A stretch of DNA of 64,000 nt from Chrysemys picta bellii. Its lineage: Eukaryota. Both the position numbers and the translations under genes were made by a program. Positions within the stretch are counted from its first letter, which is position 1. Each line of letters starts with the position of its first letter. A model generated the notes under the pieces. That model was given only the letters and a program-made list of their open reading frames with translations. It was not told the origin of the DNA and did no database searches. Where the stretch lies: the NCBI RefSeq assembly GCF_011386835.1, contig NC_088802.1:9238001-9302000 (forward strand), written 5' to 3'. Positions 1,847 through 58,720 of the stretch are shown piece after piece.

Positions 1847-3199
1847 TGCGGGGGCAGGGCTGGGGGTGACGGGAATTCTGGGAGTTGGGATGAGTTGGGG
1901 AGAATGGGGGTGTTGGGGAGAAGGGGTTGGGGGCTGGGATTTTGCAGACTGTGCCCAGGGGCACTGAGGTGTGGGGGGCTGCGGCGAGCCGGGTGTATGT
2001 CAGGGCTGCCGGGATATGTGTGGGGAAGGAGGGGAGTTTGGAGGGTATGTCTGAGGGGAGGGATATGTGTTGGGTGGGATGGGAGGGACATCCGGGGGTC
2101 TGTGTGGGGTGGGGGCCTTTTGCTGTCTAGTTTATGGAAGGTGGGGGGACCCTCAAATTTCACAGTGCACAGAGCCCCTATAGTCTTTAATCCAGGCCTG
2201 CCTGGACTCCAACCCAAACAGCCCTTAGCTGAGTTTCAGCTTATTCTCACTTTCCCCGGACTCCACACACATATTCCTCTTCCACTGCTGGTAGTTTTCA
2301 CACACCTCTAAATGGTCCTCCAGGTTCCCATACATGTTAGCAAAGGGAATTCTGGGTTCCTGTGGTGCCTTGACCCCACCCACCCACTTCTGTGCCTGAT
2401 ATTAAGTCACCGAGTATTGCTCAGAACTAAAGATAACCCAGGAGTCCTGCCTCTCAGCTCCCTGCTCTAACTCACTCTGCTCCCAGAGGTGGGAAGAGAA
2501 CCCAGGTGTCCGGGGGGTCGCAGCTGTGACTTCCAGACGTCACTGCCGTGCACTAACCCCAGCATCCTGCCCTCAGCGCTAACTCGCTCTGAGAACTGTC
2601 TCAGCTCGATTCACCCCATGGGAAGGGACAATCCCTGCCCCATGGCTCTGTGGGCCACAGTGCTTGGGCTGGGGTCACAACGCCAGCGATGGGTCTGAGG
2701 GCTGGGAGACGAGACCTGGTGTCTAGGGGAGCCCTCGGAACAGATGGGGCTGTGACTAGAGCGGGGGTTGTGGCCCCAATCCTGGTGCAGTGCTCAGGGG
2801 CTGGGATCACTCCTCCCCAGGCCACTCTCCCCTAGACGGCGTTGCTGGAGCAGTCTTTCGACCAATTGGGTGTACGGGGCCCTAGGGCATCGCAAACCAC
2901 ACCAGCCCCTTGGGAGGCTTCAGGGAGTCACATCTCCCGCTCCCTTCCCTGCCTTCTCCCTCCCCTTCACCCACGGCCCCATGCACCCAGGGACAGCTAT
3001 CATGAGCTGCACAAGTAGGAGCCTCCCACAGTCACAGAGACACAGGGCCCTTCTCAGCTGTGCTTCGGAGCTGGGGCAGCCCAGGCGTCGTGTGACACCA
3101 GGGGTGGGGTAGGTCAGGGAGCAGGGACACATCCTGGGGATCCTACCTCCTTCCAGCCATCCACTGTACTTCTCCAGATCTCTCCAGCTCTCTGGGTCT

Positions 3200-3545
3200 C
3201 TCCCCAACTCACTGTCCTTCTGCTCATCTCTTTCTCTCCTTCTCTATCCTTCTATCCATCTACCTCTCTGTCCTCCAGCCTTCTATCCATCCATCTCTCT
3301 GCAGATCTCTCTGCTCTTCTATCCATCTCTTTATTGCTCCTTTTATCCATCCTTCTCTCTGTCTTTCTTTCTGTCCTAACAATTCACCTCTCTCTCCCTC
3401 TCTCTCTCATCCATCCACTCCTCTCTCGGACTCTCCCTCTCTTTTCGCATCTGTGCACATCTGGCATCCATCAGTCCATCCACACTCTCTCTCCATTCCT
3501 CTCCCTCTATCCATCTCTCTGTCTCCTCCCCATCTCTGGGATTTC
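3200..3545 (+). repeat. Pyrimidine-rich low-complexity tract (TCTC/TCTA/TCCA)
   Basis: Seen directly; homologous tracts at ~13640-13900 and ~25030-25340. Confidence 0.8.
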
Positions 3546-4027
3546 TTTCGATCTATCACTGTGGTCTCTGGGCTTCTAGGAGACCCTGCCAGCTGAGAGA
3601 CGCTCCCTCCCAGCCTGGGACAACCTGCCTCCAGGTACTTCACTCACACACCGAGCGGGCTTGGTTCCTGGGATGGGGGTGTTACCCTGTGACCATGCAA
3701 CACTGGCTCTGAGCGTCCAGTTTGCCACATTCCCTTCCTTTTGAGACCCACCCCAGGGCCCCAGCAGTGTGTGTGTGGGGTGCAACACTTGCAGCCTCTG
3801 GGCTTCCAGAGCCAGCTGTGGATGGCAGGGGGCAAACTTAGCTGGTCTCCCTGACCCCAGAGCATCCTTAGACATTCAGCTCCACAGCTCGGGGCTGCCT
3901 CGTCCCAGGGACTGGGGGCTCAGTGCAGGGGAGCAGGGACTCCAGACTCTGCCCTGGCATCGGAGCATCTGAGCCGCCCGGAGCTGCCCGGGCAGGAGGA
4001 ACCTGGGGAGAGCAGAGCCGGAGGTGA

Positions 4028-4033
4028 ATGGAG
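4028..4033 (+). CDS. Predicted first coding stub (Met-Glu) of OR copy A
   Basis: TGA ATG GAG|gtgagt: in-frame stop directly before the ATG and a consensus 5' splice site at 4034-4039; phase 0 matches the acceptor at 6564/6565. Confidence 0.65.
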
Positions 4034-4847
4034 GTGAGTCTGGGGTTTTTCCACCACTCGTTCATGCTTACTACTGGGGAGGGTCCAGGAGCTGGGGAGC
4101 ATGTGGGCTGGTTAGATTTCTTAGCTCTGTCCGATGGGTCTGATAAAACTTCCCTGCCTCCCAGGGGTGATGTGAGGAGAAACCCACTAGAGATTGTTAG
4201 GTGCTGAGATATTGTGGTGCTGGGGGGCAGACAAGTGTCATCGATTGGTAGATTTGATTAGGGTTGGAATCCAGGGTCCCTAACCCACAAACATGCAGGG
4301 ATAACTTTGCACAGGTGAGTAGTTAATCACCTGGGCGAGGGTCTGCAGGACGGTGTTTGTAAAGTGCCGTGTAAACCTGTTGTCCTGTGAGGGCCCTGAT
4401 CCTGCAAAGATCTACGCACGTGCTTAACATAAGCCCACGGGCAACCTCACTGTAAGTGGTTTGGGTAAAGGAGATTAGGGCCGGTAGGAAGCATGGGCCA
4501 CATTTACAAAGGGATTTAGGTGCCCGCAAGTGCAGATGAGTGCTAGGTGCCTAACTCCTATAGGGCCCAAAGGAGTTAGAAAATCTTTTGGAAAATCCCA
4601 CTTGTTGCCTATCTGCATATTTAGCCCAATATGAGTCCATAATCCCCCTGAATAGCAGTGGGATTTGGGTGCATCATTCCTTAAAGTTGCTTTGGAAGCC
4701 CCCGCTCTTACTGCTCGTAGGATCAGGGTCTACCTTATCATTAGTGGTACTGGGATTATTTTATTCTCGCCCTGAGTGTTTAGATCATGGTCCCTGTCAA
4801 TCGCAGAGAGAAGTACATAAACATAAGAAATTCACGTTAAAGTGGCA

Positions 4848-4990
4848 GTAGAATCCTAGAGGAGTAGGGCTTGAGGGTATCTCCAGAGGTCATCTGGGTC
4901 ATACCCCCACACTGAGGCAGGAATAAGATTACCTAGACCATACTTGACCAGTATTTGTCCAACCTCTTCTTAAAACCCTCCCAGAATGGC
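4848..4990 (-). mobile_element. CR1 LINE 3' end fragment
   Basis: agaatcctagaggagtagggcttgagggtatctccagaggtcatct resembles a reverse-strand CR1 3' UTR; a further CR1-like piece resumes at ~5995-6120. Confidence 0.65.
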
Positions 4991-4991
4991 A

Positions 4992-5949
4992 TGGCATTCC
5001 GGGCTGCAATCCAGACTAATGAGGGGTTGGGTCACCCCTGCCCTGCTACCTTGGCTGCCTCACAATCTTTTGTTGTTGTAGCTTCCAACCTGGGTCGCTC
5101 ACAAGCAGCCTGACAGCATTCAGATCACACCCTGAGTGTCTGTGTATAGCCACAGCCCTGACCCCAGCAGCCTGTCTGCAAACACTGCTAACTGTTCTCT
5201 GGCTTCCTGCAGCCTTGGTTACCACTTGCAGGATGACCACAAGAAATTCCCAGGTCCAAATTCCCGCCGAAGACTTTGGTTCTGCACTGCCCGGCCCCTT
5301 CCTGGACAGCTCAGATATTGTAGGTCCTTTGCCTCTCTAAGGAGATCAATATCCAACAGTTTGCTACTTTAAATGGAGTTACGCCCACAATTCAGTTTAA
5401 ATGCAGTTTGGATTATGGACTAAAACATGTTTAACTATGAAGAGACAGGTTTCAAGTGAGTAAAAGTATAAGACATACAAGTCAGAAATGGTTACAGGAG
5501 AAGTAAAGGGAAAACACTTCCTAGTACTAAAATTAACAAACTAGATTTGGCTCAAGGTGAATTCCCTTTCACATGTTCCCAGTAACATTGCTGAGCCAAT
5601 TCTCAGAACAAGATCTGCTCCCAAAGTCCAAACATTGTTTCTTTTGTCTTCTTAGGGGAAAGAGAGCGAGAGATGGATAGGGAGAGATCCCTTGGGGTTT
5701 TTCTCCCCCTCACTTTTATAGTCCAGTCACCCTTTGATATGCATTTTCTTGAGGGTTCTGCCTAGCTAAAGTTCATTCCTGCTGCAAGGGCGGAGACAAA
5801 GAGTCTAATGGTGAAGTAGATGCCATGCTGTTGTTTGCTTCAATGCAGATCGGGTTGTTCCTGCTCCACTTCCTTGCCAAAGACTGGCCACTTGATAAGT
5901 CATTGCCCATCGCCTTTGATGATACCTGGCCAGACTCCTTTGTGTTTAA
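4992..5949. mobile_element. ~1 kb interspersed element (LTR-like) interrupting the CR1 fragment
   Basis: Splits two CR1 pieces and is present in all three cassettes (15702-16669; 26537-27490). Class assignment comes from recalled similarity only. Confidence 0.4.
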
Positions 5950-5994
5950 GAAACTGATTTACCCAGACTTGTCTGGTAAATGTATTTCCGACCT

Positions 5995-6120
5995 AATGGA
6001 CATGGAGAACAATTGATCACCATCCTCTTTATGACAAATTTTCACATAGTTGAAGACTGTTACCAGGTTCCCCTTCAGCCTTCTCTCCTCTAGACTAACC
6101 ATACCCAGTTCTTTCACCCA
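5995..6120 (-). mobile_element. CR1 LINE fragment
   Basis: ggacatggagaacaattgatcaccatcctcttta...cagccttctctcctctagactaa is typical reverse-strand CR1 ORF2 end sequence. Confidence 0.6.
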
Positions 6121-6564
6121 TAAGAGGGGCAGAGGACAGTTAGCGCTGCAAATTTGGGATCATAGTTAGGAGCCCCAGTTGCGACCAGGATTTGTACAAA
6201 TACAGAATAAAAGGAACAAAACAAAACAGCCTCTGTCCCAAAGACCTTATAATCTAAGCATCCATTTATCTGTCACATCCTATTGCTCCCACCAACTGCC
6301 ACAATCCAGTTTTCTAGGACACTTTAATTCCCTTATGTATGGATCCTCCTTTGTCACTAAGTGTCACAGAACCACTTTTCTGCGACAAAGCATTTCCCTG
6401 GCAGAAGGATCCTACCTGCCACCCAACTGGCCCAGATTTTCGATGACAAAGTCACAAGCAGGCGTGGTTCATTCAGAGCAAATGGGGCTGCCCTTGAATG
6501 TGTCTCCTTTGTGTATGGCTGTTGGGGCTCCTTTCATCCTTATCTTTGTCCCTTCTCGCTGCAG

Positions 6565-7509
6565 GAGGAAAGAGGGAACGGGAGCTCTCGGTGGGAGTTC
6601 ATCCTAATGGGGATCTCTGACCAACCACACCTGGAGATGCTGCTTTTTGTGGTCTTCCTGGTCTTGTACGTCCTGAACCTGGTGGGGAACCTGGCCATCA
6701 TTGTGGTCTTGTGGCTGGAACCCTGTCTCCACACCCCTATGTATTTCTTCCTCAGCAACCTCTCTTTCCTGGACCTTTGCTACACCACCAGCACCGTTCC
6801 TCAGATGCTGGTGAACATGTGCAGCACCCACAAGTCCATCACCTGGGCCGGTTGCGTGGCCCAGCTCTACGTCTCCCTCTCGCTGGGCTGCACCGAGTGC
6901 CTCCTGCTGGCCGTCATGGCCTACGACCGCTACGCCGCCATCTGCCAGCCACTGCGCTACACAATTGTCATGAGCCGCCGCCTCTGCATGCAGATGGCGG
7001 CCACTGTCTGGTTGAGCGGCTTCAGCAACTCCATGCTGCAGACCATCCTGACCGTGCGGCTGCCCCGGTGTGGGCGGAACCGGGTCAACCACTTCTTCTG
7101 CGAGATGCCGGCCCTGCTCAAACTGGCCTGTGTCGACACCTCCAGTACCGAGGCCGAGGCTTTTGCTGTCAGTGTGATCTTCCTGCTGGTGCCGCTGGGC
7201 CTCATCCTGGTCTCCTACAGCTACATCGTCATCGCCGTGCTGAGGATTCGCTCGGCCCAGGGCAGGCTCAAGGCCTTCAACACCTGCGCCTCCCACCTGG
7301 CCGTGGTGTCGCTCTTCTATGGCACGGCCATTTTCACGTATCTACAGCCTCCATCCAGCTACTCCCAGGACCGGAGCAACATGGTCTCCCTCTTCTATGG
7401 CGTCATCGCCCCCATGCTGAACTCGCTGATCTACACGCTGAGGAACAAGGATGTGCACGGGGCCCTAAGGAGGGTGCTGGGGAGGCTATTCGGGAATAAG
7501 AGGACATGA
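6565..7509 (+). CDS. Olfactory receptor, class II, family-2-like, copy A main exon (314 aa; 316 aa with the spliced Met-Glu)
   Basis: Motifs GN (TM1), LHTPMYFFLSNLS, MAYDRYAAIC, FFCEMP, KAFNTCASHL, PMLNSLIYTLRN; NGS sequon; polypyrimidine tract plus cag acceptor ending at 6564. Confidence 0.93.
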   Translation, partial: EERGNGSSRWEFILMGISDQPHLEMLLFVVFLVLYVLNLVGNLAIIVVLWLEPCLHTPMYFFLSNLSFLDLCYTTSTVPQMLVNMCSTHKSITWAGCVAQLYVSLSLGCTECLLLAVMAYDRYAAICQPLRYTIVMSRRLCMQMAATVWLSGFSNSMLQTILTVRLPRCGRNRVNHFFCEMPALLKLACVDTSSTEAEAFAVSVIFLLVPLGLILVSYSYIVIAVLRIRSAQGRLKAFNTCASHLAVVSLFYGTAIFTYLQPPSSYSQDRSNMVSLFYGVIAPMLNSLIYTLRNKDVHGALRRVLGRLFGNKRT

Positions 7510-8994
7510 GCCAGAGAAATGAGTCGGGACTGGCTGACTTGGTTCTCTATGGGGCAGCAGCTCCGATCCAGCCTCAGGCCAGGGGGACTGGCAATGGACG
7601 ATGGAGCCTTTCCCATCTAGGAGGCCTGCATTTTAAGGTCTCTGTTCATGTCTGCACATGGCGCTGGGGCTGGGAAACCAGAGGTCACTCACCAGGAGCC
7701 CCAGAAGGCAGAAGAGCATGTAAAGGCCTGGTGGGCAGCGTTGGGCACCTGGCTCTGAATGGAAGAGTGGGAGCGACGTGGGCATTTGAGAGTCATCTCT
7801 CTGCACCAGATCCAGCCAGCACAGACCACATCCCTGCCCCCCCAATATAAAATACCTCAGATTCTCTCTTATTGAATATTGATCTAACCCCCCCACCCAC
7901 CAATGTTACCCCTTTTCTATTTAATTCTCTGGTATGGATCGTCTGGGAGCTTCTTCCCCCTTCTCAAGTTAAACTGCAGCTACTTCGGCATTTGGAGGGA
8001 AACAGCTGGCACCGATCATTGCTCCAAATTGTGGATGGGATCAATGAAGGTGTTAAACTCATTAGAATGAACTTTCCCCTCAGATTTTGCCTCTTTTCTC
8101 TTTAATGACCAAATATTGATCTAAAATCTCCTCAGATTTTGCCTTTTTTTCTCTAATTACCAAATATTGATCTAAAATCCCCTGATATTTTCTCTTTATT
8201 GACTATCGATAGAAATTTCCCTCCATTTTCCGACTCCTCAAGTCAGGCACTGTTCCTGCTAAATTATGGAATATTGATCTACAATCCCCCCAGATTTGGC
8301 CATTTTTCTCTTTAATTGCTGAATATGGGGAAATAAACTCTCTCACTTTGGGGTCTTTCCCCCCCCCTCCCATTTTAAATTGCCGCCACATCTGTTTTTG
8401 GAGGGAACCAGCTGACTTGAGTTCTCGTCCCACATGCTGGATGAAGAAAAGGAGGATGTTAGATGTGGGGGTTCCCCCCTCCATTTTATGCTGCATGAAA
8501 TTCTCCTGGTCTTGGGAAGAAGTGATTAGGCCAAATCTTTACCCCATGGGGTGAATGACTGCGGGAAGGAGGTTAAACATCTCAATGAACAACTTTCCCC
8601 TTGTGTAGGAGAATCAAATTCTTTTCTCTTGTGGAAATCAAAACCAGTGTGTTTGCTGATTCGAGTGACTTGTGCAATTCTGAACATACATCGAGGCTAG
8701 AAACCTTCACCCCTCCAGCTGGTAATTGACCTGACAGAGGCTGTCCATCACAGTTGGCCACACGAACGCTATCTCTGAGCTGTCCATCTTCAGCTTCCGC
8801 CCACTCCCAGTTGCCACGAAATCTTCATATTCAGGGTCCAGCCTCCCCTCCCGTCTCTCCTGCTAAAGCGGAAAACCCAAAGGGACTGTGGAGTTGTAGT
8901 GTGGGCAGCAATGCGTCTTGGGAAAGGGGGCATAGATATGAAAGAGCTGCGTCCTTCTCAGCAAGACAGAGACCAGGGAAGCGATGAGATTAAG

Positions 8995-25838: not shown

Positions 25839-25844
25839 ATGGAG
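25839..25844 (+). CDS. Predicted first coding stub (Met-Glu) of OR copy C
   Basis: TGA ATG GAG|gtgagt identical to copy A; phase 0 with the acceptor ending at 28119. Confidence 0.65.
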
Positions 25845-28119
25845 GTGAGTCCGGGTTTTTTTCCACCACTCGTTCATGCTTATTACTGGGGAGGGGCCAG
25901 GAGCTGGGGAGCATGTGGGCTGGTTAGATTTCTTAGCTCTGTGCGATGGGTCTGATAAAACTTCCCTGCCTCCCAGGGGTGATGTGAGGATAAACCCACT
26001 AGAGATTGTTGGGTGCTGAGATATTGTGGTGCTGGGGGGCAGACAAGTGCCATCGATTGGTAGATTTGATTAGCGTTGGAATCCAGGGTCCCTAACCCAC
26101 AAACATGCAGGGAGAACTTTGCACAGGTGAGTAGTTAATCACCTGGGTGAGGGTCTGCAGGACGGTGTTTGTAAAGTGCCGTGTAAACCTGTTGTCCCGT
26201 GAGGGGCCCTGATCCTGCAAAGATCTACGCACGTGCTTAACATAAGCCCACGGGCAACCCCACTGTAAGTGGTTTGGGTAAAGGAGATTAGGGCCAGTAG
26301 GAAGCATGGGCCACATTTACAAAGGGATTTAGGTGCCTGCAAGTGCAGATGAGTGCTAGGTGCCTAACTCCTATTGGGACCAAAGGAATTAGAAAATCTT
26401 TTGGAAAATCCCACTTGTTGCCTATCTGCATATTTAGCCCTATATGAGTCCATAATCTCCCTGAATATCAGTGGGGTTTGGGTGCATCATTCCTTAAAGC
26501 TGCTTTGGAAACCCCAGCTCTAACTGCTCATAGGATTCCGGGCTGCAATCCAGATTAATGAGGGGTTGGGTCACTCCTGCCCTGCTACCTTGGCTGCCTC
26601 ACAATGTTTTGTTCTTGTAGCTTCCAACCTGGGTCGCTCACAAGCAGCCTGACAGCATGCAGGTCACACCCTGAGTGTCTGTGTATAGCCACAGCCCTGA
26701 TCCAGCAACTCTGACCCCAGCAGCCTGTCCGCAAACACCAGCCACACTGTGGCTTCCTGGAGCCTTGGTTACCACTTGCAGGGTGACCACAACAAACTCC
26801 CAGTCCCAAATTCCCCCCCAAGACTTGGGTTCTGCACTGCCCGGCCTCTTCCTGGACAGTTCAGATATTGTAGGTCCGTTGCCTCTCTACGGAGATCAAT
26901 ATCCAACAGTTTGCTACTTTAAATGGAGTTACCCCCACAATTCAGTTTAAATGCAGTTTGGATTATGTTTATTTAACTACGAAGAGACAGGTTTCATGTG
27001 AGTACAAGTATAAGACATTCAAGTCAGAAATGGTTACAGGAGAAGTAAAGGGAAAACACTTCCTAGTACTAAAATTAACAAACTAGACTTGGCTCCAGGT
27101 GAAATCCCTTCCACATGTTCCCAGTAACATTGCTGAGCCAATTCTTAGACCAGGATCTGCTCCCAAAGTCCAAACGCTGTTTCTTTTGTCTTCTTAGGGG
27201 AAAGAGAGCGAGAGATGGATAGGGAGAGATCCCTTGGAGTGTTTCTCCTCCTCACTTTTATAGTCCAGTCACCCTTTGATATGCATTTTCTTGAGGGTTC
27301 TGCCTAGCTAAAGTTCATTCCTGCTGCAAGGGCGGAGACAAGGAGTCTAATGGTGAAGGAGATGCCATGCTGTTGTTTGCTTCAATGCAGATCGGGTTGT
27401 TCCTGCCCCACTTCCTTGCCAAAGACTGGCCACTTGATAAGTGATTGCCCATCGCCTTTGATGACACCTGGCCAGACTCCTTTGTGTTTAAGAAACTGAT
27501 TTACCCAGACTTGTCTGGTAAACGTATTTCCGACCTAATGGACATGGAGAACAATTGATCACCATCCTCTTTATGACAAAGTTTCACATAGTTGAAGACT
27601 GTTACCAGGTCCCCCTTCAACCTTCTCTCCTCTAGACTAACCATACCCAGTTCTTTCACCCATAAGAGGGGCAGAGGACAGTTAGCGCTGCAAATTTGGG
27701 TTCATAGTTAGGAGCCCCAGTCGTGACCAGGATCTGTACAAATACAGAATAAAAGGAACAAAACAAAGCAGCCTCTGTCCCAAAGACCTTATAATCTAAG
27801 CATCTATTTATCTATCACATTCTATTGCTCCCATCAACTGCCACAGATCCAGTTTTCTAGGACACTTTAATTCCCTGATATATGGATCTTCCTTCGTCAC
27901 TAACTGCTGCAGAACCACTTTTCTGCGACAAAGTATTTCCCTGGCAGAAGGATCCTACCTGCCACCCAATTGGCCCAGATTTTCAATGACAAAGTCACAA
28001 GCGGGCGTGGTTCATTCAGAGCAAATGGGGTTGCCCATAAATGTGCCCTTGAATGTGTCTCCTTTGTGTATGGCTGTTGGGGCTCCTTTCATCCTTATCT
28101 TTGTCCCTTCTCGCTGCAG

Positions 28120-29064
28120 GAGGAAAGAGGGAATGGGAGTTCCCAGTTCGAGTTCATCCTATTGGGGGTCTCTGACCAACCACGCCTGGAGATGCTGCTT
28201 TTCGTGGTGTTCCTGGTCTTGTACATCCTGAACCTGGTGGGGAACCTGACCATCATTGTGGTCTTGTGGCTGGAACCCTGTCTCCACACCCCTATGTATT
28301 TCTTCCTCAGCAACCTCTCTTTCCTGGACCTTTGCTACACCACCAGCACCATTCCTCAGATGCTGGTGAACTTCCGCAGCACCCACAAGTCCATCACCTG
28401 GGCCGGCTGCGTGGCCCAGCTCTACGTCTTCCTCTCGCTGGGCTGCACCGAGTGCCTCCTCCTGGTCGTCATGGCCTACGACCGCTACGTCGCCATCTGC
28501 CAGCCGCTGCGCTACACAATCGTCATGAGCCGCCGCCTCTGCATGCAGATGGCGGCCACTGTCTGGTTGAGCGGCTTCGGCAACTCCATCCTGCAGACCA
28601 TCCTGACTGTGCGGCTGCCCCGGTGTGGGAGGAACCGGATCGACCACTTCTTCTGCGAGGTTCCGGCCCTGCTCAAACTGGCCTGTGTTGACACCTCCGC
28701 TAACGAGGCCGAGGCTTTTGCTGTCAGTGTGATCTTCCTGCTGGTGCCGCTGGGCCTCATCCTAGTCTCCTACAGCTACATCGTCGCCGCTGTGCTTAGG
28801 ATTCGCTCGGCCCAGGGCAGGCTCAAGGCCTTCAACACCTGTGCCTCCCACCTGGCCGTGGTGTCGCTCTTCTACGGCACGGCCATTTTCATGTATCTAC
28901 AACCTCCGTCCAGCTACTCCCAGGACCGGGGCAAGATGGTCTCCCTCTTCTATGGCATCATCGCCCCCATGCTGAACTCGCTGATCTACACCCTGAGGAA
29001 CAAGGATGTGCACGGGGCCCTAAGGAGGGTGCTGGGGAGGTTATTCGGGAGTAAGAGGACATGA
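28120..29064 (+). CDS. Olfactory receptor, class II, family-2-like, copy C main exon (314 aa; 316 aa spliced)
   Basis: Same OR motifs as copy A (MAYDRYVAIC, KAFNTCASHL, PMLNSLIYTLRN); uninterrupted frame; acceptor ctgcag at 28114-28119. Confidence 0.93.
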   Translation, partial: EERGNGSSQFEFILLGVSDQPRLEMLLFVVFLVLYILNLVGNLTIIVVLWLEPCLHTPMYFFLSNLSFLDLCYTTSTIPQMLVNFRSTHKSITWAGCVAQLYVFLSLGCTECLLLVVMAYDRYVAICQPLRYTIVMSRRLCMQMAATVWLSGFGNSILQTILTVRLPRCGRNRIDHFFCEVPALLKLACVDTSANEAEAFAVSVIFLLVPLGLILVSYSYIVAAVLRIRSAQGRLKAFNTCASHLAVVSLFYGTAIFMYLQPPSSYSQDRGKMVSLFYGIIAPMLNSLIYTLRNKDVHGALRRVLGRLFGSKRT

Positions 29065-33930: not shown

Positions 33931-33942
33931 GGGGGGGTGGGA

Positions 33943-34250
33943 GGAGCTGCCCCCCATATCTCCAGGCGGGAGGAGTAAGGAGCTGCCCCCCATAGCCTCA
34001 GGAGGGGGGAGGAGCTGCCCCCCATATCTCCAGGTGGGAGGAGTAAGGAGCTGCCCCCCATAGCCTCAGGAGGGGGGAGGAGCTGCCCCCCATATCTCCA
34101 GGCGGGGGGGGTGGGAGGAGCTGCCCCCCATAGCCCCAGGAGGGGGGAGGAGCTGCCCCCCATATCTCCAGGCGGGAGGAGTAAGGAGCTGCCCCCCATA
34201 GCCTCAGGAGGGGGGAGGAGCTGTCCCCCATATCTCCAGGCGGGGGGACA
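33943..34250 (+). repeat. G-rich minisatellite, 68-bp higher-order unit made of 36- and 32-bp monomers
   Basis: ggagctgccccccatatctcc-type units start at 33943, 34011, 34079, 34149 and 34217. Confidence 0.92.
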
Positions 34251-52290: not shown

Positions 52291-53238
52291 ACTACGGAGA
52301 GGGATGGCTGCCTACCCAAACAGTAGTTTAGCCACATGCTGCCCAAATGGCCCTGAAGCAGGGAGTCGACCGTACGGTCGCCCTCCCCACTTGGGTTTGC
52401 AGCAGCCTGGTGGCGTGTGAACATGGCTGAGCCCAGCCTGTCGCCGTGTTAAATATAGGGCCGGGGCTCTCACCGGGGGGATTAATGAAGCTCCTGATGC
52501 AGCTACTAAGCAAGGGTGGGATTACGGGCTTAAGCCGGTGCTATGCGCAGTTCCCGCCCGTGGGACCAGCGGGGTCCGAGCTGAGGTTCGTGCAGCAGCT
52601 CTTGGGGAGGGAGGGGCCTGCCAGGGCATCTCTGCACACCAGCCACTGGGTGGGGAGGAGAGGGGATCTCTGATCCGGTGTGTCTCCAGTCTTGGGCTTC
52701 ATCAGCCGGTACACTCAGCTTCCCCTCCCAATGCACCCTCCTCCCCAGGCGCGGCGGGGGATTACCCTTTCTGCTCACACCTGGGGTTCCCAGGCCCTCC
52801 CCGCCCTGCAACTCCCCCACTCCACCCTATCTGGGAGGGGGCGTTTCTGCTGCTTGGCCTAAGGCCCCCCATCCTGTAGGACAACCAATTCCTGGAGTCA
52901 GGACGTGCAGGGGGAGCGTTGGCCTCTGCCCCTCCAGACAGCCGAGCCGATCGCGAATTAGCTCAGCTAAAGGATAACCATGGGGCAGGGAAGATCTTTG
53001 GTGCAGGTAGTTGAAGGGGCTGATGCCGAAGGAGGGGAGAGAGGGGCCCGGGGGTATCCCTGGGAGCAATGGGGGGACATGAAGAATGGGGCAATATCGA
53101 GTAAATGTCAGTGAAAGAATCTGGAGGGGAAGATGTATCCGGATGGGGAAATCGGCTCCCTGAGGGACGGGCTGGGGGCCCCTTTGCTGGGGACTTGTAA
53201 AACCAGGAATGGACGGAGCCCTGGAGAATAGGCTGTAG

Positions 53239-53606
53239 GGGCTGGGCCCTGATGGGGCATCTCCATCTCACTAGGGGCTGGGCTGGATGGGTTGTCTCCA
53301 TCTCACATGGGGATAGGCCCTGATGGGGCGTCTCCATCTCACTGGGGGCTGGGCCCTGATGGGGCGTCTCCATCTCACTGGGGGCTGGGCCCTGATGGGG
53401 CTTCTCCATCTCACTGGGGGATGGGCCCTGATGGGGCGTCTCCATCTCACTGGGGGATGGGCTGGATGGAGTGTCTCCATCTCACATGGGGATAGGCCCT
53501 GATGGGGCATCTCCATCTCACTGGGGGATGGGCTGGGTGGGCCCTGATGGGGCATCTCCATCTCACAGGGGGATGGGCCCTGATGGGGTGTCTCCATGTC
53601 ACTGGG
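53239..53606 (+). repeat. ~39-bp minisatellite (gggccctgatggggcgtctccatctcactggggg), about 9 units
   Basis: Seen directly; produces the repetitive METPHQGP ORF on the minus strand. Confidence 0.9.
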
Positions 53607-53899: not shown

Positions 53900-55261
53900 A
53901 TGCTGAAGAAGAGCAGCCTGGTTCTCTGGGGCGTGGTGCTGTTTGTGGCCTGGAACGCCCTGCTCCTTTTCTTCCTGTGGACCCGGCCCCCAGCCTTCGA
54001 CGACCACAGCCACTTGACCGAGGAGGTCATCCGGCTGGCCCAGGACGCAGAGCTGGAGCTGGAGAACCAGAAGGACCTGCTGCGGCAGATCCACCGGTAT
54101 AGCGCCCTCTGGAGCAAGAAGAGGAAGAAGGCGGAGGAGACGGGTCGGCTCCCGCCGCCCGCCGCCGCCTCCAACACTGGGGCTTTGCCCACCACAGAGG
54201 CCGCCCCGCGCCGGTCCCAGGCCTCCCCGGATGCGGTCCTGCCCGTGGTGGTGATCGCCTGTGACCGCAGCACGGTCCGTCGGTGCCTCGACAAGCTGCT
54301 GCACTACCGGCCGTCCCGGGAGCGCTTCCCCATCATCGTGAGCCAGGACTGCGGGCACGAGGAGACGGCCCGGGTCATCGCCTCCTACGGCGAGGCCGTC
54401 ATGCACATCAAGCAGCCGGACCTGAGCGACATCCCGGTGCCCACGGACCACCGCAAGTTCCAGGGCTACTACAAGATCGCCCGACACTACCGCTGGGCCC
54501 TGAGCCAGGTTTTCCGCACCTTCCAGTACCAGGCGGCCATTGTGGTAGAGGATGACCTGGAAGTGGCTCCAGATTTCTTCGAGTACTTCCAGGCGGCCTT
54601 CCCGCTCCTGCTGGCTGACCCCAGCCTCTGGTGTGTCTCGGCCTGGAATGACAATGGCAAGGAGCAGATGGTGGAGGCTGGCCGGCCGGAGCTGCTCTAC
54701 CGTACAGACTTCTTCCCCGGCCTGGGTTGGCTGCTGCTGTCGGAGCTGTGGGACGAGCTGGAGCCCAAGTGGCCCAGAGCCTTCTGGGACGACTGGCTGA
54801 GGCAGCCGGAGCAGCGGCGCAGCCGCTCCTGCATTAGGCCCGAGGTCTCCCGCACCATGACCTTCGGCCGCAAGGGCGTGAGCCACGGGCAGTTCTTCGA
54901 CCAGTACCTGAAGTTCATCAAGCTCAACGACCGCTTCGTGCCTTTCACCCAGCTGGACCTCTCCTACCTCAAGAAGGAGGAGTATGAGCGCTCGTTCCTG
55001 CCCAAGGTCTACGACGCCCCAGAGCTGCGGGTGGAGGAGCTGCAGGGCAACCAGCGTCGGGAACTGGGCACCGTCCGCGTGCAGTACAGCAGCCGCGACT
55101 CCTTCAAGGCCTTCGCCAAGGCCCTGGGCGTTATGGATGATCTCAAGTCGGGGGTGCCCCGTGCCGGCTACCGCGGCATCGTCAGCTTTCTTTACCGCGG
55201 CCGGCGGGTCTACCTGGCGCCCCCTTCTGACTGGACGGGCTATGACCCCAGTTGGAGTTAG
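53900..55261 (+). CDS. MGAT1: Alpha-1,3-mannosyl-glycoprotein 2-beta-N-acetylglucosaminyltransferase (GlcNAc-T I, GT13), 453 aa, single coding exon
   Basis: MLKK..LVLWG..LFVAWNALLL type II anchor; VIACDR, IIVSQDCG, YYKIARHYRWAL, EDD metal-binding motif, SAWNDNG, RTDFFPGLGW, FWDDW, GVSHGQFF, YDPSWS end. Confidence 0.98.
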   Translation: MLKKSSLVLWGVVLFVAWNALLLFFLWTRPPAFDDHSHLTEEVIRLAQDAELELENQKDLLRQIHRYSALWSKKRKKAEETGRLPPPAAASNTGALPTTEAAPRRSQASPDAVLPVVVIACDRSTVRRCLDKLLHYRPSRERFPIIVSQDCGHEETARVIASYGEAVMHIKQPDLSDIPVPTDHRKFQGYYKIARHYRWALSQVFRTFQYQAAIVVEDDLEVAPDFFEYFQAAFPLLLADPSLWCVSAWNDNGKEQMVEAGRPELLYRTDFFPGLGWLLLSELWDELEPKWPRAFWDDWLRQPEQRRSRSCIRPEVSRTMTFGRKGVSHGQFFDQYLKFIKLNDRFVPFTQLDLSYLKKEEYERSFLPKVYDAPELRVEELQGNQRRELGTVRVQYSSRDSFKAFAKALGVMDDLKSGVPRAGYRGIVSFLYRGRRVYLAPPSDWTGYDPSWS

Positions 55262-58451: not shown

Positions 58452-58720
58452 CAGCTGAGATCAGGGCCCCGTTGTGCCGGGCGCTGCCCAGACACACAGC
58501 GAGAGACGGTCCCTGCCCCAGCTGAGATCAGGGCCCCATTGTGCTGGGCGCTGCCCAGACACACAGCGAGAGACGGTCCCTGCCCCAGCTGAGATCAGGG
58601 CCCTGTTGTGCCCGGCACTGCACAGACACACAGGGAGAGACAGTCCCTGCCCCAGCTGAGATCAGGGCCCTGTTGTGCCCGGCGCTGCACAGACACACAG
58701 GAAGAGACAGTCCCTGCCCC
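58452..58720 (+). repeat. 67-bp x4 tandem repeat amplified from an L2/MIR-like element
   Basis: cagctgagatcagggccc starts at 58452, 58519, 58586 and 58653. Confidence 0.9.

What the first reader, a model, noticed from the sequence alone, without database searches (positions are those of the whole stretch)
4025..6600. Olfactory receptors whose start codon sits on a 6-nt coding stub across a 2.3-2.8 kb intron
Seen: the OR main exons have no in-frame ATG before the NGS sequon (the long ORF-track starts in copies A, B and C are GTG, GTG and TTG). Each begins right after a polypyrimidine-cag acceptor with GAG GAA AGA GGG AAY. Upstream, all three cassettes keep TGA ATG GAG|gtgagt (4025, 14416, 25836). 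Phase-0 joining gives MEEERGNGSS..EFIL, a normal OR N-terminus, and 316 aa in copies A and C. Known: vertebrate OR coding regions are usually intronless. Inference: this is an OR subfamily with an intron inside the CDS, which single-exon OR pipelines would call startless pseudogenes or give false N-termini.
Basis: partly seen in the sequence, partly recalled or inferred. Interest (0 to 1): 0.78.

Follow-up and report, generated by a model that had tools for sequence, protein, structure and literature searches.

The report
Turtle smell receptors with split start
Three tandem painted-turtle olfactory receptor genes very probably take their start codon from a two-codon piece of an exon 2.3-2.8 kb upstream, a layout kept since the turtle-alligator ancestor; split receptor genes are already known in mammals, so this mainly corrects gene models.

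Summary
TGA-ATG-GAG|GTGAGT sits at 4025, 14416 and 25836. A pyrimidine-rich CAG|GAGGAAAGAGGGAAY acceptor sits at 6562, 17243 and 28117. The main exons have no in-frame ATG before the NGS sequon, and joining in phase 0 gives 316 codons in copies A and C.

Agreement among the three copies proves little, because they are ~11 kb tandem duplicates ~91% identical even in the intron. The real support is comparative:
- The same exon with ATGGAG|GT lies 5-9 kb upstream of relatives in Emydura, Carettochelys and two alligator loci; a third has GC at the donor. A turtle profile finds it as the only hit in a 22 kb alligator locus (E=3e-23).
- It is the only phase-0 ATG...|GTRAG candidate shared by all seven loci.
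- The main exons (dN/dS 0.2-0.45) and their first 26 codons are under purifying selection.
- The internal Met is Lys in three relatives.

NCBI's model for copy A uses another start (MGL..., ATG at 2744) that Carettochelys lacks. RNA data were contigs only. One RNA-like contig ends 5 nt from the acceptor; no junction was seen.

This is a new member of a known kind (Barnes 2020). One alligator model already uses the stub. This scan reached the same verdict on neighbouring DNA (s1-312469).

The parts
3872..4033 (+). Copy A upstream exon (5' limit not determined); no ATG in any frame in the 200 nt before the stub
   Evidence: Alignable to Emydura, Carettochelys and alligator; no upstream ATG
4025..4027 (+). 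Copy A in-frame TGA directly before the start codon
4028..4033 (+). Copy A coding stub ATG GAG (Met-Glu)
   Evidence: invariant in 7 loci
4034..6564 (+). Copy A intron, 2531 nt, GTGAGT...CAG, phase 0
   Evidence: 80% pyrimidine in the 20 nt before CAG
6565..7509 (+). Copy A main exon coding part, 314 codons plus TGA; class II OR (7tm_4)
   Evidence: exact-match RNA-like contigs at 6918-7068 and 7269-7431 in run X3
14419..14424 (+). Copy B coding stub ATG GAG
14425..17245 (+). Copy B intron, 2821 nt
17246..18124 (+). Copy B main exon, 292 codons, C-terminus lost (no TM7) in this assembly
   Evidence: a B-like but intact RNA-like contig exists in run X4
25839..25844 (+). Copy C coding stub ATG GAG
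25845..28119 (+). Copy C intron, 2275 nt
28120..29064 (+). Copy C main exon coding part, 314 codons plus stop
2744..2751 (+). Rival first coding piece used by the NCBI model of copy A (ATGGGGCT|gtgact, joined to an acceptor at 6573)
   Evidence: ATG absent at the homologous place in Carettochelys

Best explanation
Copies A and C, and copy B in its intact form, are functional class II olfactory receptor genes. Their ordinary 5' intron has come to lie inside the coding region. The upstream exon ends with ATG GAG, the intron (GTGAGT...pyrimidine tract-CAG) is removed in phase 0, and translation of the spliced mRNA gives MEEERGNGSS...EFIL, 316 residues. Only spliced mRNA carries a start codon in front of the receptor frame. 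The layout arose by a shift of the start codon into the upstream exon, not by insertion of an intron. Close relatives with an in-exon ATG keep the acceptor at the same place, a few bases before their ATG. Shown here: the sequence features, their conservation, and purifying selection on the N-terminal codons. Inferred: that the junction 4033/6565 is the one used and that the stub ATG initiates translation.
For: Features present. The homologous exon with ATGGAG|GTGAGT was found in Emydura (L003:308), Carettochelys (L005:3830) and alligator (L002:8001, L007:2693); alligator L008 has ATGGAG|GC. The 13-nt run AATGGAGGTGAGT is the longest invariant stretch in the 7-locus alignment. An nhmmer profile of the turtle exon gives a single hit in the 22-kb alligator locus, at the stub (E=3.2e-23), while blastn aligned only the main exon and one 71-nt piece to that locus. 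The NCBI alligator model P0059 is ME|NERGNGSS and uses this stub. Among all phase-0 ATG...|GTRAG candidates in about 5-11 kb upstream, the stub is the only one shared by all 7 loci. Main exons have exactly 314 codons in five turtle loci, with dN/dS 0.2-0.45. The first 26 codons have dN 0.09-0.2 against dS 0.13-1.5. There is no ATG in any frame within 200 nt upstream of the stub. A complementary case is Pelodiscus P0036, which has an in-exon ATG 3 nt after the homologous CAG, while its weak (nhmmer E=0.09) exon-1 counterpart reads AGACAG|gc, without ATG. In run X4, a 2459-nt contig at depth 19.5 (37 Mb run) ends 5 nt from the acceptor, and the intron contig beside it has depth 3.6.
Against: No RNA read or contig shows the 4033/6565 junction, and X4 has no contig on the upstream exon. 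Contigs of runs X1 and X2 read straight across the acceptor, but their depth is the same over intron and exon, and X1 carries an antisense spliced form, so they may be DNA or antisense pre-mRNA. Turtle introns are themselves 75-80% conserved, so turtle-turtle conservation of three bases is weak evidence; the weight rests on alligator. The Kozak context in turtles is mediocre (T at -3). NCBI models A, Z and Malaclemys with a different start.
Confidence: 0.8

Rival explanations
1. The NCBI model is right. Translation starts at ATG 2744 (ATGGGGCT|gtgact), a 3.8-kb intron ends at an acceptor at 6573, and the product is MGLGNGSS..., 314 residues.
For: P0003, P0004 and P0005 carry this N-terminus. 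The gene range equals 2744-7509. The ATG is present in A, B, C and Z.
Against: The donor GCT|GTGACT is poor (C at +5). The acceptor follows purine-rich GGAGGAAAG, with 55% pyrimidine against 80% for the other acceptor, and lies 8 nt after a strong CAG. The ATG is GCC at the homologous place in Carettochelys. The model would discard the conserved codons EER. The X4 contig includes 6560-6572, joined to the exon.
Confidence: 0.05
2. The upstream exon is purely untranslated and the receptor starts at an internal Met (LEML, or FILMG in copy A), giving an N-terminally truncated protein; or the genes are startless pseudogenes.
For: There is no in-exon ATG before the sequon. Copy B is truncated in this assembly.
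Against: The first 26 codons evolve under purifying selection and keep the N-glycosylation sequon. The LEML Met is Lys in Carettochelys and two alligator paralogues. ORFs of exactly 314 codons are kept across more than 200 My with dN/dS 0.2-0.45.
Confidence: 0.04
3. Other, lineage-specific upstream exons supply alternative start codons, so the stub is one of several first coding exons. An example is the MSPKSQ exon modelled in Carettochelys.
For: The Carettochelys model joins ATG...CAA|GTAAGT, 1.9 kb upstream, to the same conserved acceptor. Barnes 2020 describes ORs with alternative N-terminal isoforms.
Against: That exon has no alignable counterpart in Chrysemys. In cassette A only three phase-0 candidates exist and none but the stub is shared.
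Confidence: 0.1

Closest known systems
Mammalian 'split OR genes' (Barnes et al. 2020, BMC Genomics 21:196, PMC7055050)
   Same: A full ORF appears only when an upstream exon supplies the initiator Met. The intron lies in the extracellular N-terminus. Intron sizes are 2-4 kb. First parts of 1-3 codons are listed (e.g. Olfr94/OR2I1P with the intron after residue 2, 2.4-3.0 kb; Olfr1331/1333; Olfr735/OR4Q3). Such loci were formerly called pseudogenes.
   Different: Here the case is in reptiles and is conserved between turtles and a crocodilian. The mammalian cases have RNA-seq junction support, which is missing here. Orthology to any mammalian split OR was not tested.
Alligator mississippiensis RefSeq model 'olfactory receptor 2C1' (P0059)
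   Same: It has the same stub ATGGAG|GTGAGT, the same phase-0 acceptor, and the N-terminus ME|NERGNGSS.
   Different: Its intron is 5.0 kb and its product has 347 residues with a longer C-terminus.
Ordinary single-coding-exon relatives (Pelodiscus P0036, Python P0085, Galemys P0008)
   Same: They belong to the same OR family. The Pelodiscus gene has the acceptor at the homologous place.
   Different: Their ATG lies inside the main exon. The weak (nhmmer E=0.09) Pelodiscus exon-1 counterpart has no ATG.

Membership tests
Vertebrate class II olfactory receptor (Pfam 7tm_4) | Match to the 7tm_4 / 7tm_1 profiles over seven TM segments | tested here: met
   E=5e-50 (A) and 4e-54 (C) over profile positions 1-277 of 280. 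Copy B matches positions 1-230 only.
Vertebrate class II olfactory receptor (Pfam 7tm_4) | N-terminal NxS/T sequon and the MAYDRY and KAFxTCxSHL motifs | tested here: met
   NGS, MAYDRYAAIC, KAFNTCASHL and PMLNSLIY are read in the translations.
Split OR gene in the sense of Barnes et al. 2020 | An intact full-length ORF only when two exons are joined | tested here: met
   There is no in-frame ATG in the main exon before the sequon. The stub plus 314 codons gives 316.
Split OR gene in the sense of Barnes et al. 2020 | Initiator Met and splice junction conserved in orthologues | tested here: met
   Emydura, Carettochelys and alligator.
Split OR gene in the sense of Barnes et al. 2020 | RNA-seq reads across the junction | tested here: inconclusive
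   Only contigs were on hand. An RNA-like contig ends 5 nt from the acceptor, but no joint 4033/6565 was seen.
Split OR gene in the sense of Barnes et al. 2020 | Expression in olfactory neurons at the level of intact ORs | not testable with these tools
   No olfactory-epithelium run was identified. Run ids are coded and the tissue is unknown.

The most novel reading that the evidence does not exclude
The two-codon start exon is an obligate feature of this OR lineage that has been kept for at least the ~250 My since the turtle-crocodilian ancestor. The start codon has toggled between exon 1 and the main exon in sister clades. If the quick tree is right, the split state is ancestral to a clade that also holds squamate and turtle genes with an in-exon ATG. 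The split might even be homologous to the mammalian two-codon split of Olfr94/OR2I1P, which would make it amniote-wide.
Probability: 0.15. Interest if true: 0.5.

Novelty: new member of a known kind. Interest (0 to 1): 0.3.

Why it matters
Olfactory receptor repertoires of reptiles are counted with single-exon ORF pipelines; for example, Policarpo et al. 2024 (PMC10869828) extract ORFs of at least 750 bp around tblastn hits. Such pipelines will either drop these genes, give them a wrong start, or count them only by luck of an upstream GTG-free ORF. NCBI's own models give homologous genes five different N-termini. [quoted passage not shown] It adds nothing new in principle beyond what is known from mammals.

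Tried and rejected
1. Conservation among copies A, B and C as evidence. Rejected, because whole cassettes are ~91% identical, introns included.
2. The NCBI start at 2744. Rejected because of weak splice sites and no ATG in Carettochelys.
3. Inferring 'ab initio model' from the gene range starting at the ATG. Withdrawn, because every locus returned by the tool starts at its ATG, so the range is probably the CDS only.
4. X1 and X2 read-through contigs as a refutation. Not accepted, because depth is uniform over intron and exon and an antisense GT-AG joint is present.
5. Assigning the X4 contig to the upstream copy Z. Rejected, because only 19 of 39 variants match. It is B-like (25 of 26) but intact.
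6. A mammalian counterpart of the stub. The Galemys relative encodes MEENNGSS in one exon, and the exon-1 profile finds nothing in that locus.
7. A literature search for reptile split ORs found no paper.
8. Exons were searched by reference, apart.

Full report
WHAT IS THERE

The window is Chrysemys picta bellii CM062329.1, about 9.238-9.302 Mb. This follows from the locus returned for the 100% identical NCBI protein P0003. Three olfactory receptor (OR) main exons lie at 6565-7509 (copy A), 17246-18124 (copy B) and 28120-29064 (copy C). All match Pfam 7tm_4. MGAT1 is a single ORF at 53900-55261.

- TGA-ATG-GAG|GTGAGT is at 4025, 14416 and 25836.
- The acceptor is at 6562, 17243 and 28117.
- The introns are 2531, 2821 and 2275 nt.
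- The long ORFs start with GTG, GTG and TTG and have no in-frame ATG.
- A and C have 314 codons from acceptor to stop, so the joined model has 316.
- Copy B has 292 codons and no TM7. It lacks the stretch that is 7406-7895 in A.

WHY THE THREE COPIES ARE NOT INDEPENDENT

A self-comparison shows ~11 kb tandem units that are 88-95% identical everywhere. Introns are at ~91.5% and coding exons at 92-94%. The stub being identical in A, B and C is what recent duplication gives.

COMPARATIVE TEST

I fetched loci of relatives returned by the protein search of the main exon alone. The results by species are:
- Emydura (a pleurodire): a clearly homologous exon ends in TGA-ATGGAG|GTGAGT, 5.5 kb upstream of a main exon that begins CAG|GAGGAAAGAGAGAAC.
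- Carettochelys: the same, 7 kb upstream.
- Alligator, locus L002: the NCBI model of P0059 is itself ATGGAG|GTGAGT joined over 5.0 kb to CAG|AATGAAAGAGGAAAT, giving ME|NERGNGSS.
- Alligator, locus L007: a second paralogue has the stub 8.8 kb upstream.
- Alligator, locus L008: a third paralogue has ATGGAG|GC.
- A fourth Chrysemys copy (Z, in L004) lies outside the window, 22-26 kb upstream, and has the same layout.

In a seven-locus alignment, AATGGAGGTGAGT is the longest invariant run. As an unanchored test, I ran a profile of the six turtle sequences with nhmmer against the whole 22-kb alligator locus. It gave one hit, at the stub, with E=3.2e-23. For L007 the value was E=1.4e-20. By blastn, only the main exon and one 71-nt piece aligned to that alligator locus. 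The exon is therefore a conserved island. Among turtles the whole intron is 75-80% identical, so turtle-turtle conservation is weaker evidence.

I also listed every ATG followed by an open phase-0 frame of at most 40 codons and then GTRAG, upstream of each acceptor. Cassette A has three such candidates. The stub is the only one present in all seven loci.

THE N-TERMINUS IS TRANSLATED

Pairwise dN/dS over the main exons is 0.18-0.63, mostly 0.2-0.45. In the first 26 codons alone, dN is 0.09-0.2 and dS is 0.13-1.5. There are many synonymous changes and the sequon is kept. The internal Met of 'LEML' is Lys in Carettochelys and in two alligator paralogues, so it cannot be the conserved start. No ATG in any frame lies in the 200 nt before the stub in A, B or C.

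RIVAL MODEL FROM NCBI

P0003 (copy A), P0004 (Malaclemys) and P0005 (copy Z) begin MGLGNGSS. The gene range shows that this comes from ATGGGGCT|gtgact at 2744, joined to an acceptor at 6573. Several points count against it:
- The donor has C at +5.
- The acceptor follows a purine run and lies 8 nt after the strong CAG. It has 55% pyrimidine against 80%.
- Carettochelys has GCC in place of the ATG.

Other NCBI models of homologous genes use yet other starts:
- Emydura: MND, which would need a GC donor.
- Carettochelys: the MSPKSQ exon.
- Alligator P0068: MEGS, with an inner acceptor.
- Alligator P0072: MWTQ.

That is five different first exons for one gene family, against one conserved stub.

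HOW IT AROSE

Pelodiscus P0036 is a single-exon relative. Its upstream sequence is homologous to the pyrimidine tract and CAG of copy A, and its ATG lies 3 nt after that CAG. Its weak (nhmmer E=0.09) counterpart of the upstream exon reads AGACAG|gc, with no ATG. Python P0085 and Galemys P0008 are also single-exon. The intron is therefore the ordinary 5' intron of OR genes, and it is the start codon that moved. This agrees with Barnes et al., who found that the split introns do not differ from the last 5' intron of other ORs.

A quick tree places a mammalian 2B2 clade outside. Inside it come the alligator clade, the turtle split clade (support 99), and a clade of squamate plus turtle genes that holds the three checked in-exon-ATG genes. 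The deep branches are short and the order is not secure.

RNA

Only Logan contigs could be laid, and one call was allowed.
- Run X3 holds two exact pieces of the main exon of A and nothing from its intron apart from repeats.
- Run X4 (37 Mb) holds a 2459-nt contig at depth 19.5. It begins at 6560, 5 nt before the acceptor, and runs about 1 kb past 8000. The intron contig next to it has depth 3.6.
- By its variants, the X4 contig is B-like (25 of 26) and is not copy Z (19 of 39). It is intact where B has its deletion.

This fits an exon boundary at the predicted acceptor. It speaks against the 6573 acceptor. It shows neither the donor nor the junction. X4 has no contig on the upstream exon.

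Runs X1 and X2 read across the acceptor, but with equal depth over intron and exon. X1 also holds a joint from 5990 to 7691. After a 2-nt shift, this is a GTGAGT...AG intron on the minus strand. These runs therefore do not refute splicing.

WHAT IS KNOWN

Barnes et al. 2020 (PMC7055050) list 13 human and 41 mouse split ORs. Most have the intron in the N-terminus. Several have 1-3 codons on the first exon, among them Olfr94/OR2I1P, with the intron after residue 2 and a span of 2.4-3.0 kb. OR2V1 is listed there on human chromosome 5; from my own knowledge it lies near MGAT1. It has a split isoform with the intron at residue 24. I found no paper on reptile split ORs. An earlier follow-up of this scan reached the same verdict on the ORs 22 kb upstream (s1-312469).

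LIMITS

No human sequence was fetched or compared; only gene names from a paper's table were read.

VERDICT

My confidence in the stub start is 0.8. The finding is a new member of a known kind, and its interest is 0.3.

Noticed in passing
window 5993-7692, minus strand: A contig of run X1 joins 5990 to 7691. After a 2-nt shift the skipped part is GTGAGT...AG on the minus strand, with a fair pyrimidine tract. This points to a spliced antisense transcript whose intron encloses the whole OR main exon of copy A. The contig is 91-96% like the window, so it comes from a relative or a paralogue.
   Followed up: partly
window 17246-18124 (copy B): Copy B lacks the equivalent of A 7406-7895 and so lacks TM7. 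Yet run X4 holds a B-like contig (25 of 26 B variants) that is intact across that stretch, at depth 19.5 in a 37-Mb run. The deletion may be polymorphic, an assembly fault, or there may be another B-like copy.
   Followed up: partly
window 3866-3885 and 4040-4110: Non-coding blocks beside the stub are conserved as far as alligator. One is CTTAGACATTCAG about 160 nt upstream, which could be an acceptor (TTAG|A) or a promoter element. The other is about 80 nt of intron just after the donor.
   Followed up: no
window 5997-6036: A 40-nt piece inside the intron is covered at depth 14-147 in all four runs, with loose ends on both sides. It is a fragment of a high-copy, transcribed repeat.
   Followed up: no
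window 53238-53606 and 53900-55261: MGAT1 is a single 453-codon ORF (Pfam GNT-I, E=3e-185). A 36-nt tandem array of about 10 copies lies about 300 nt upstream of its ATG. The 487-codon minus-strand ORF over it is the usual antisense artefact of GC-rich coding DNA.
   Followed up: no
window 33939-34248; 58452-58720: Tandem arrays of 68/138-nt units (94% matches) and of 67-nt units (4 copies, 94%).
   Followed up: no
L005:3773-3835 (Carettochelys): In Carettochelys the upstream exon has no TGA before the stub, and an in-frame ATG lies 19 codons further up. A longer N-terminus is therefore possible there if transcription starts far enough upstream.
   Followed up: no
L010:9001 (Galemys): A mammalian relative encodes MEENNGSS in a single exon. 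This is close to the spliced reptile N-terminus MEEERGNGSS. It may be coincidence or an old N-terminus.
   Followed up: no
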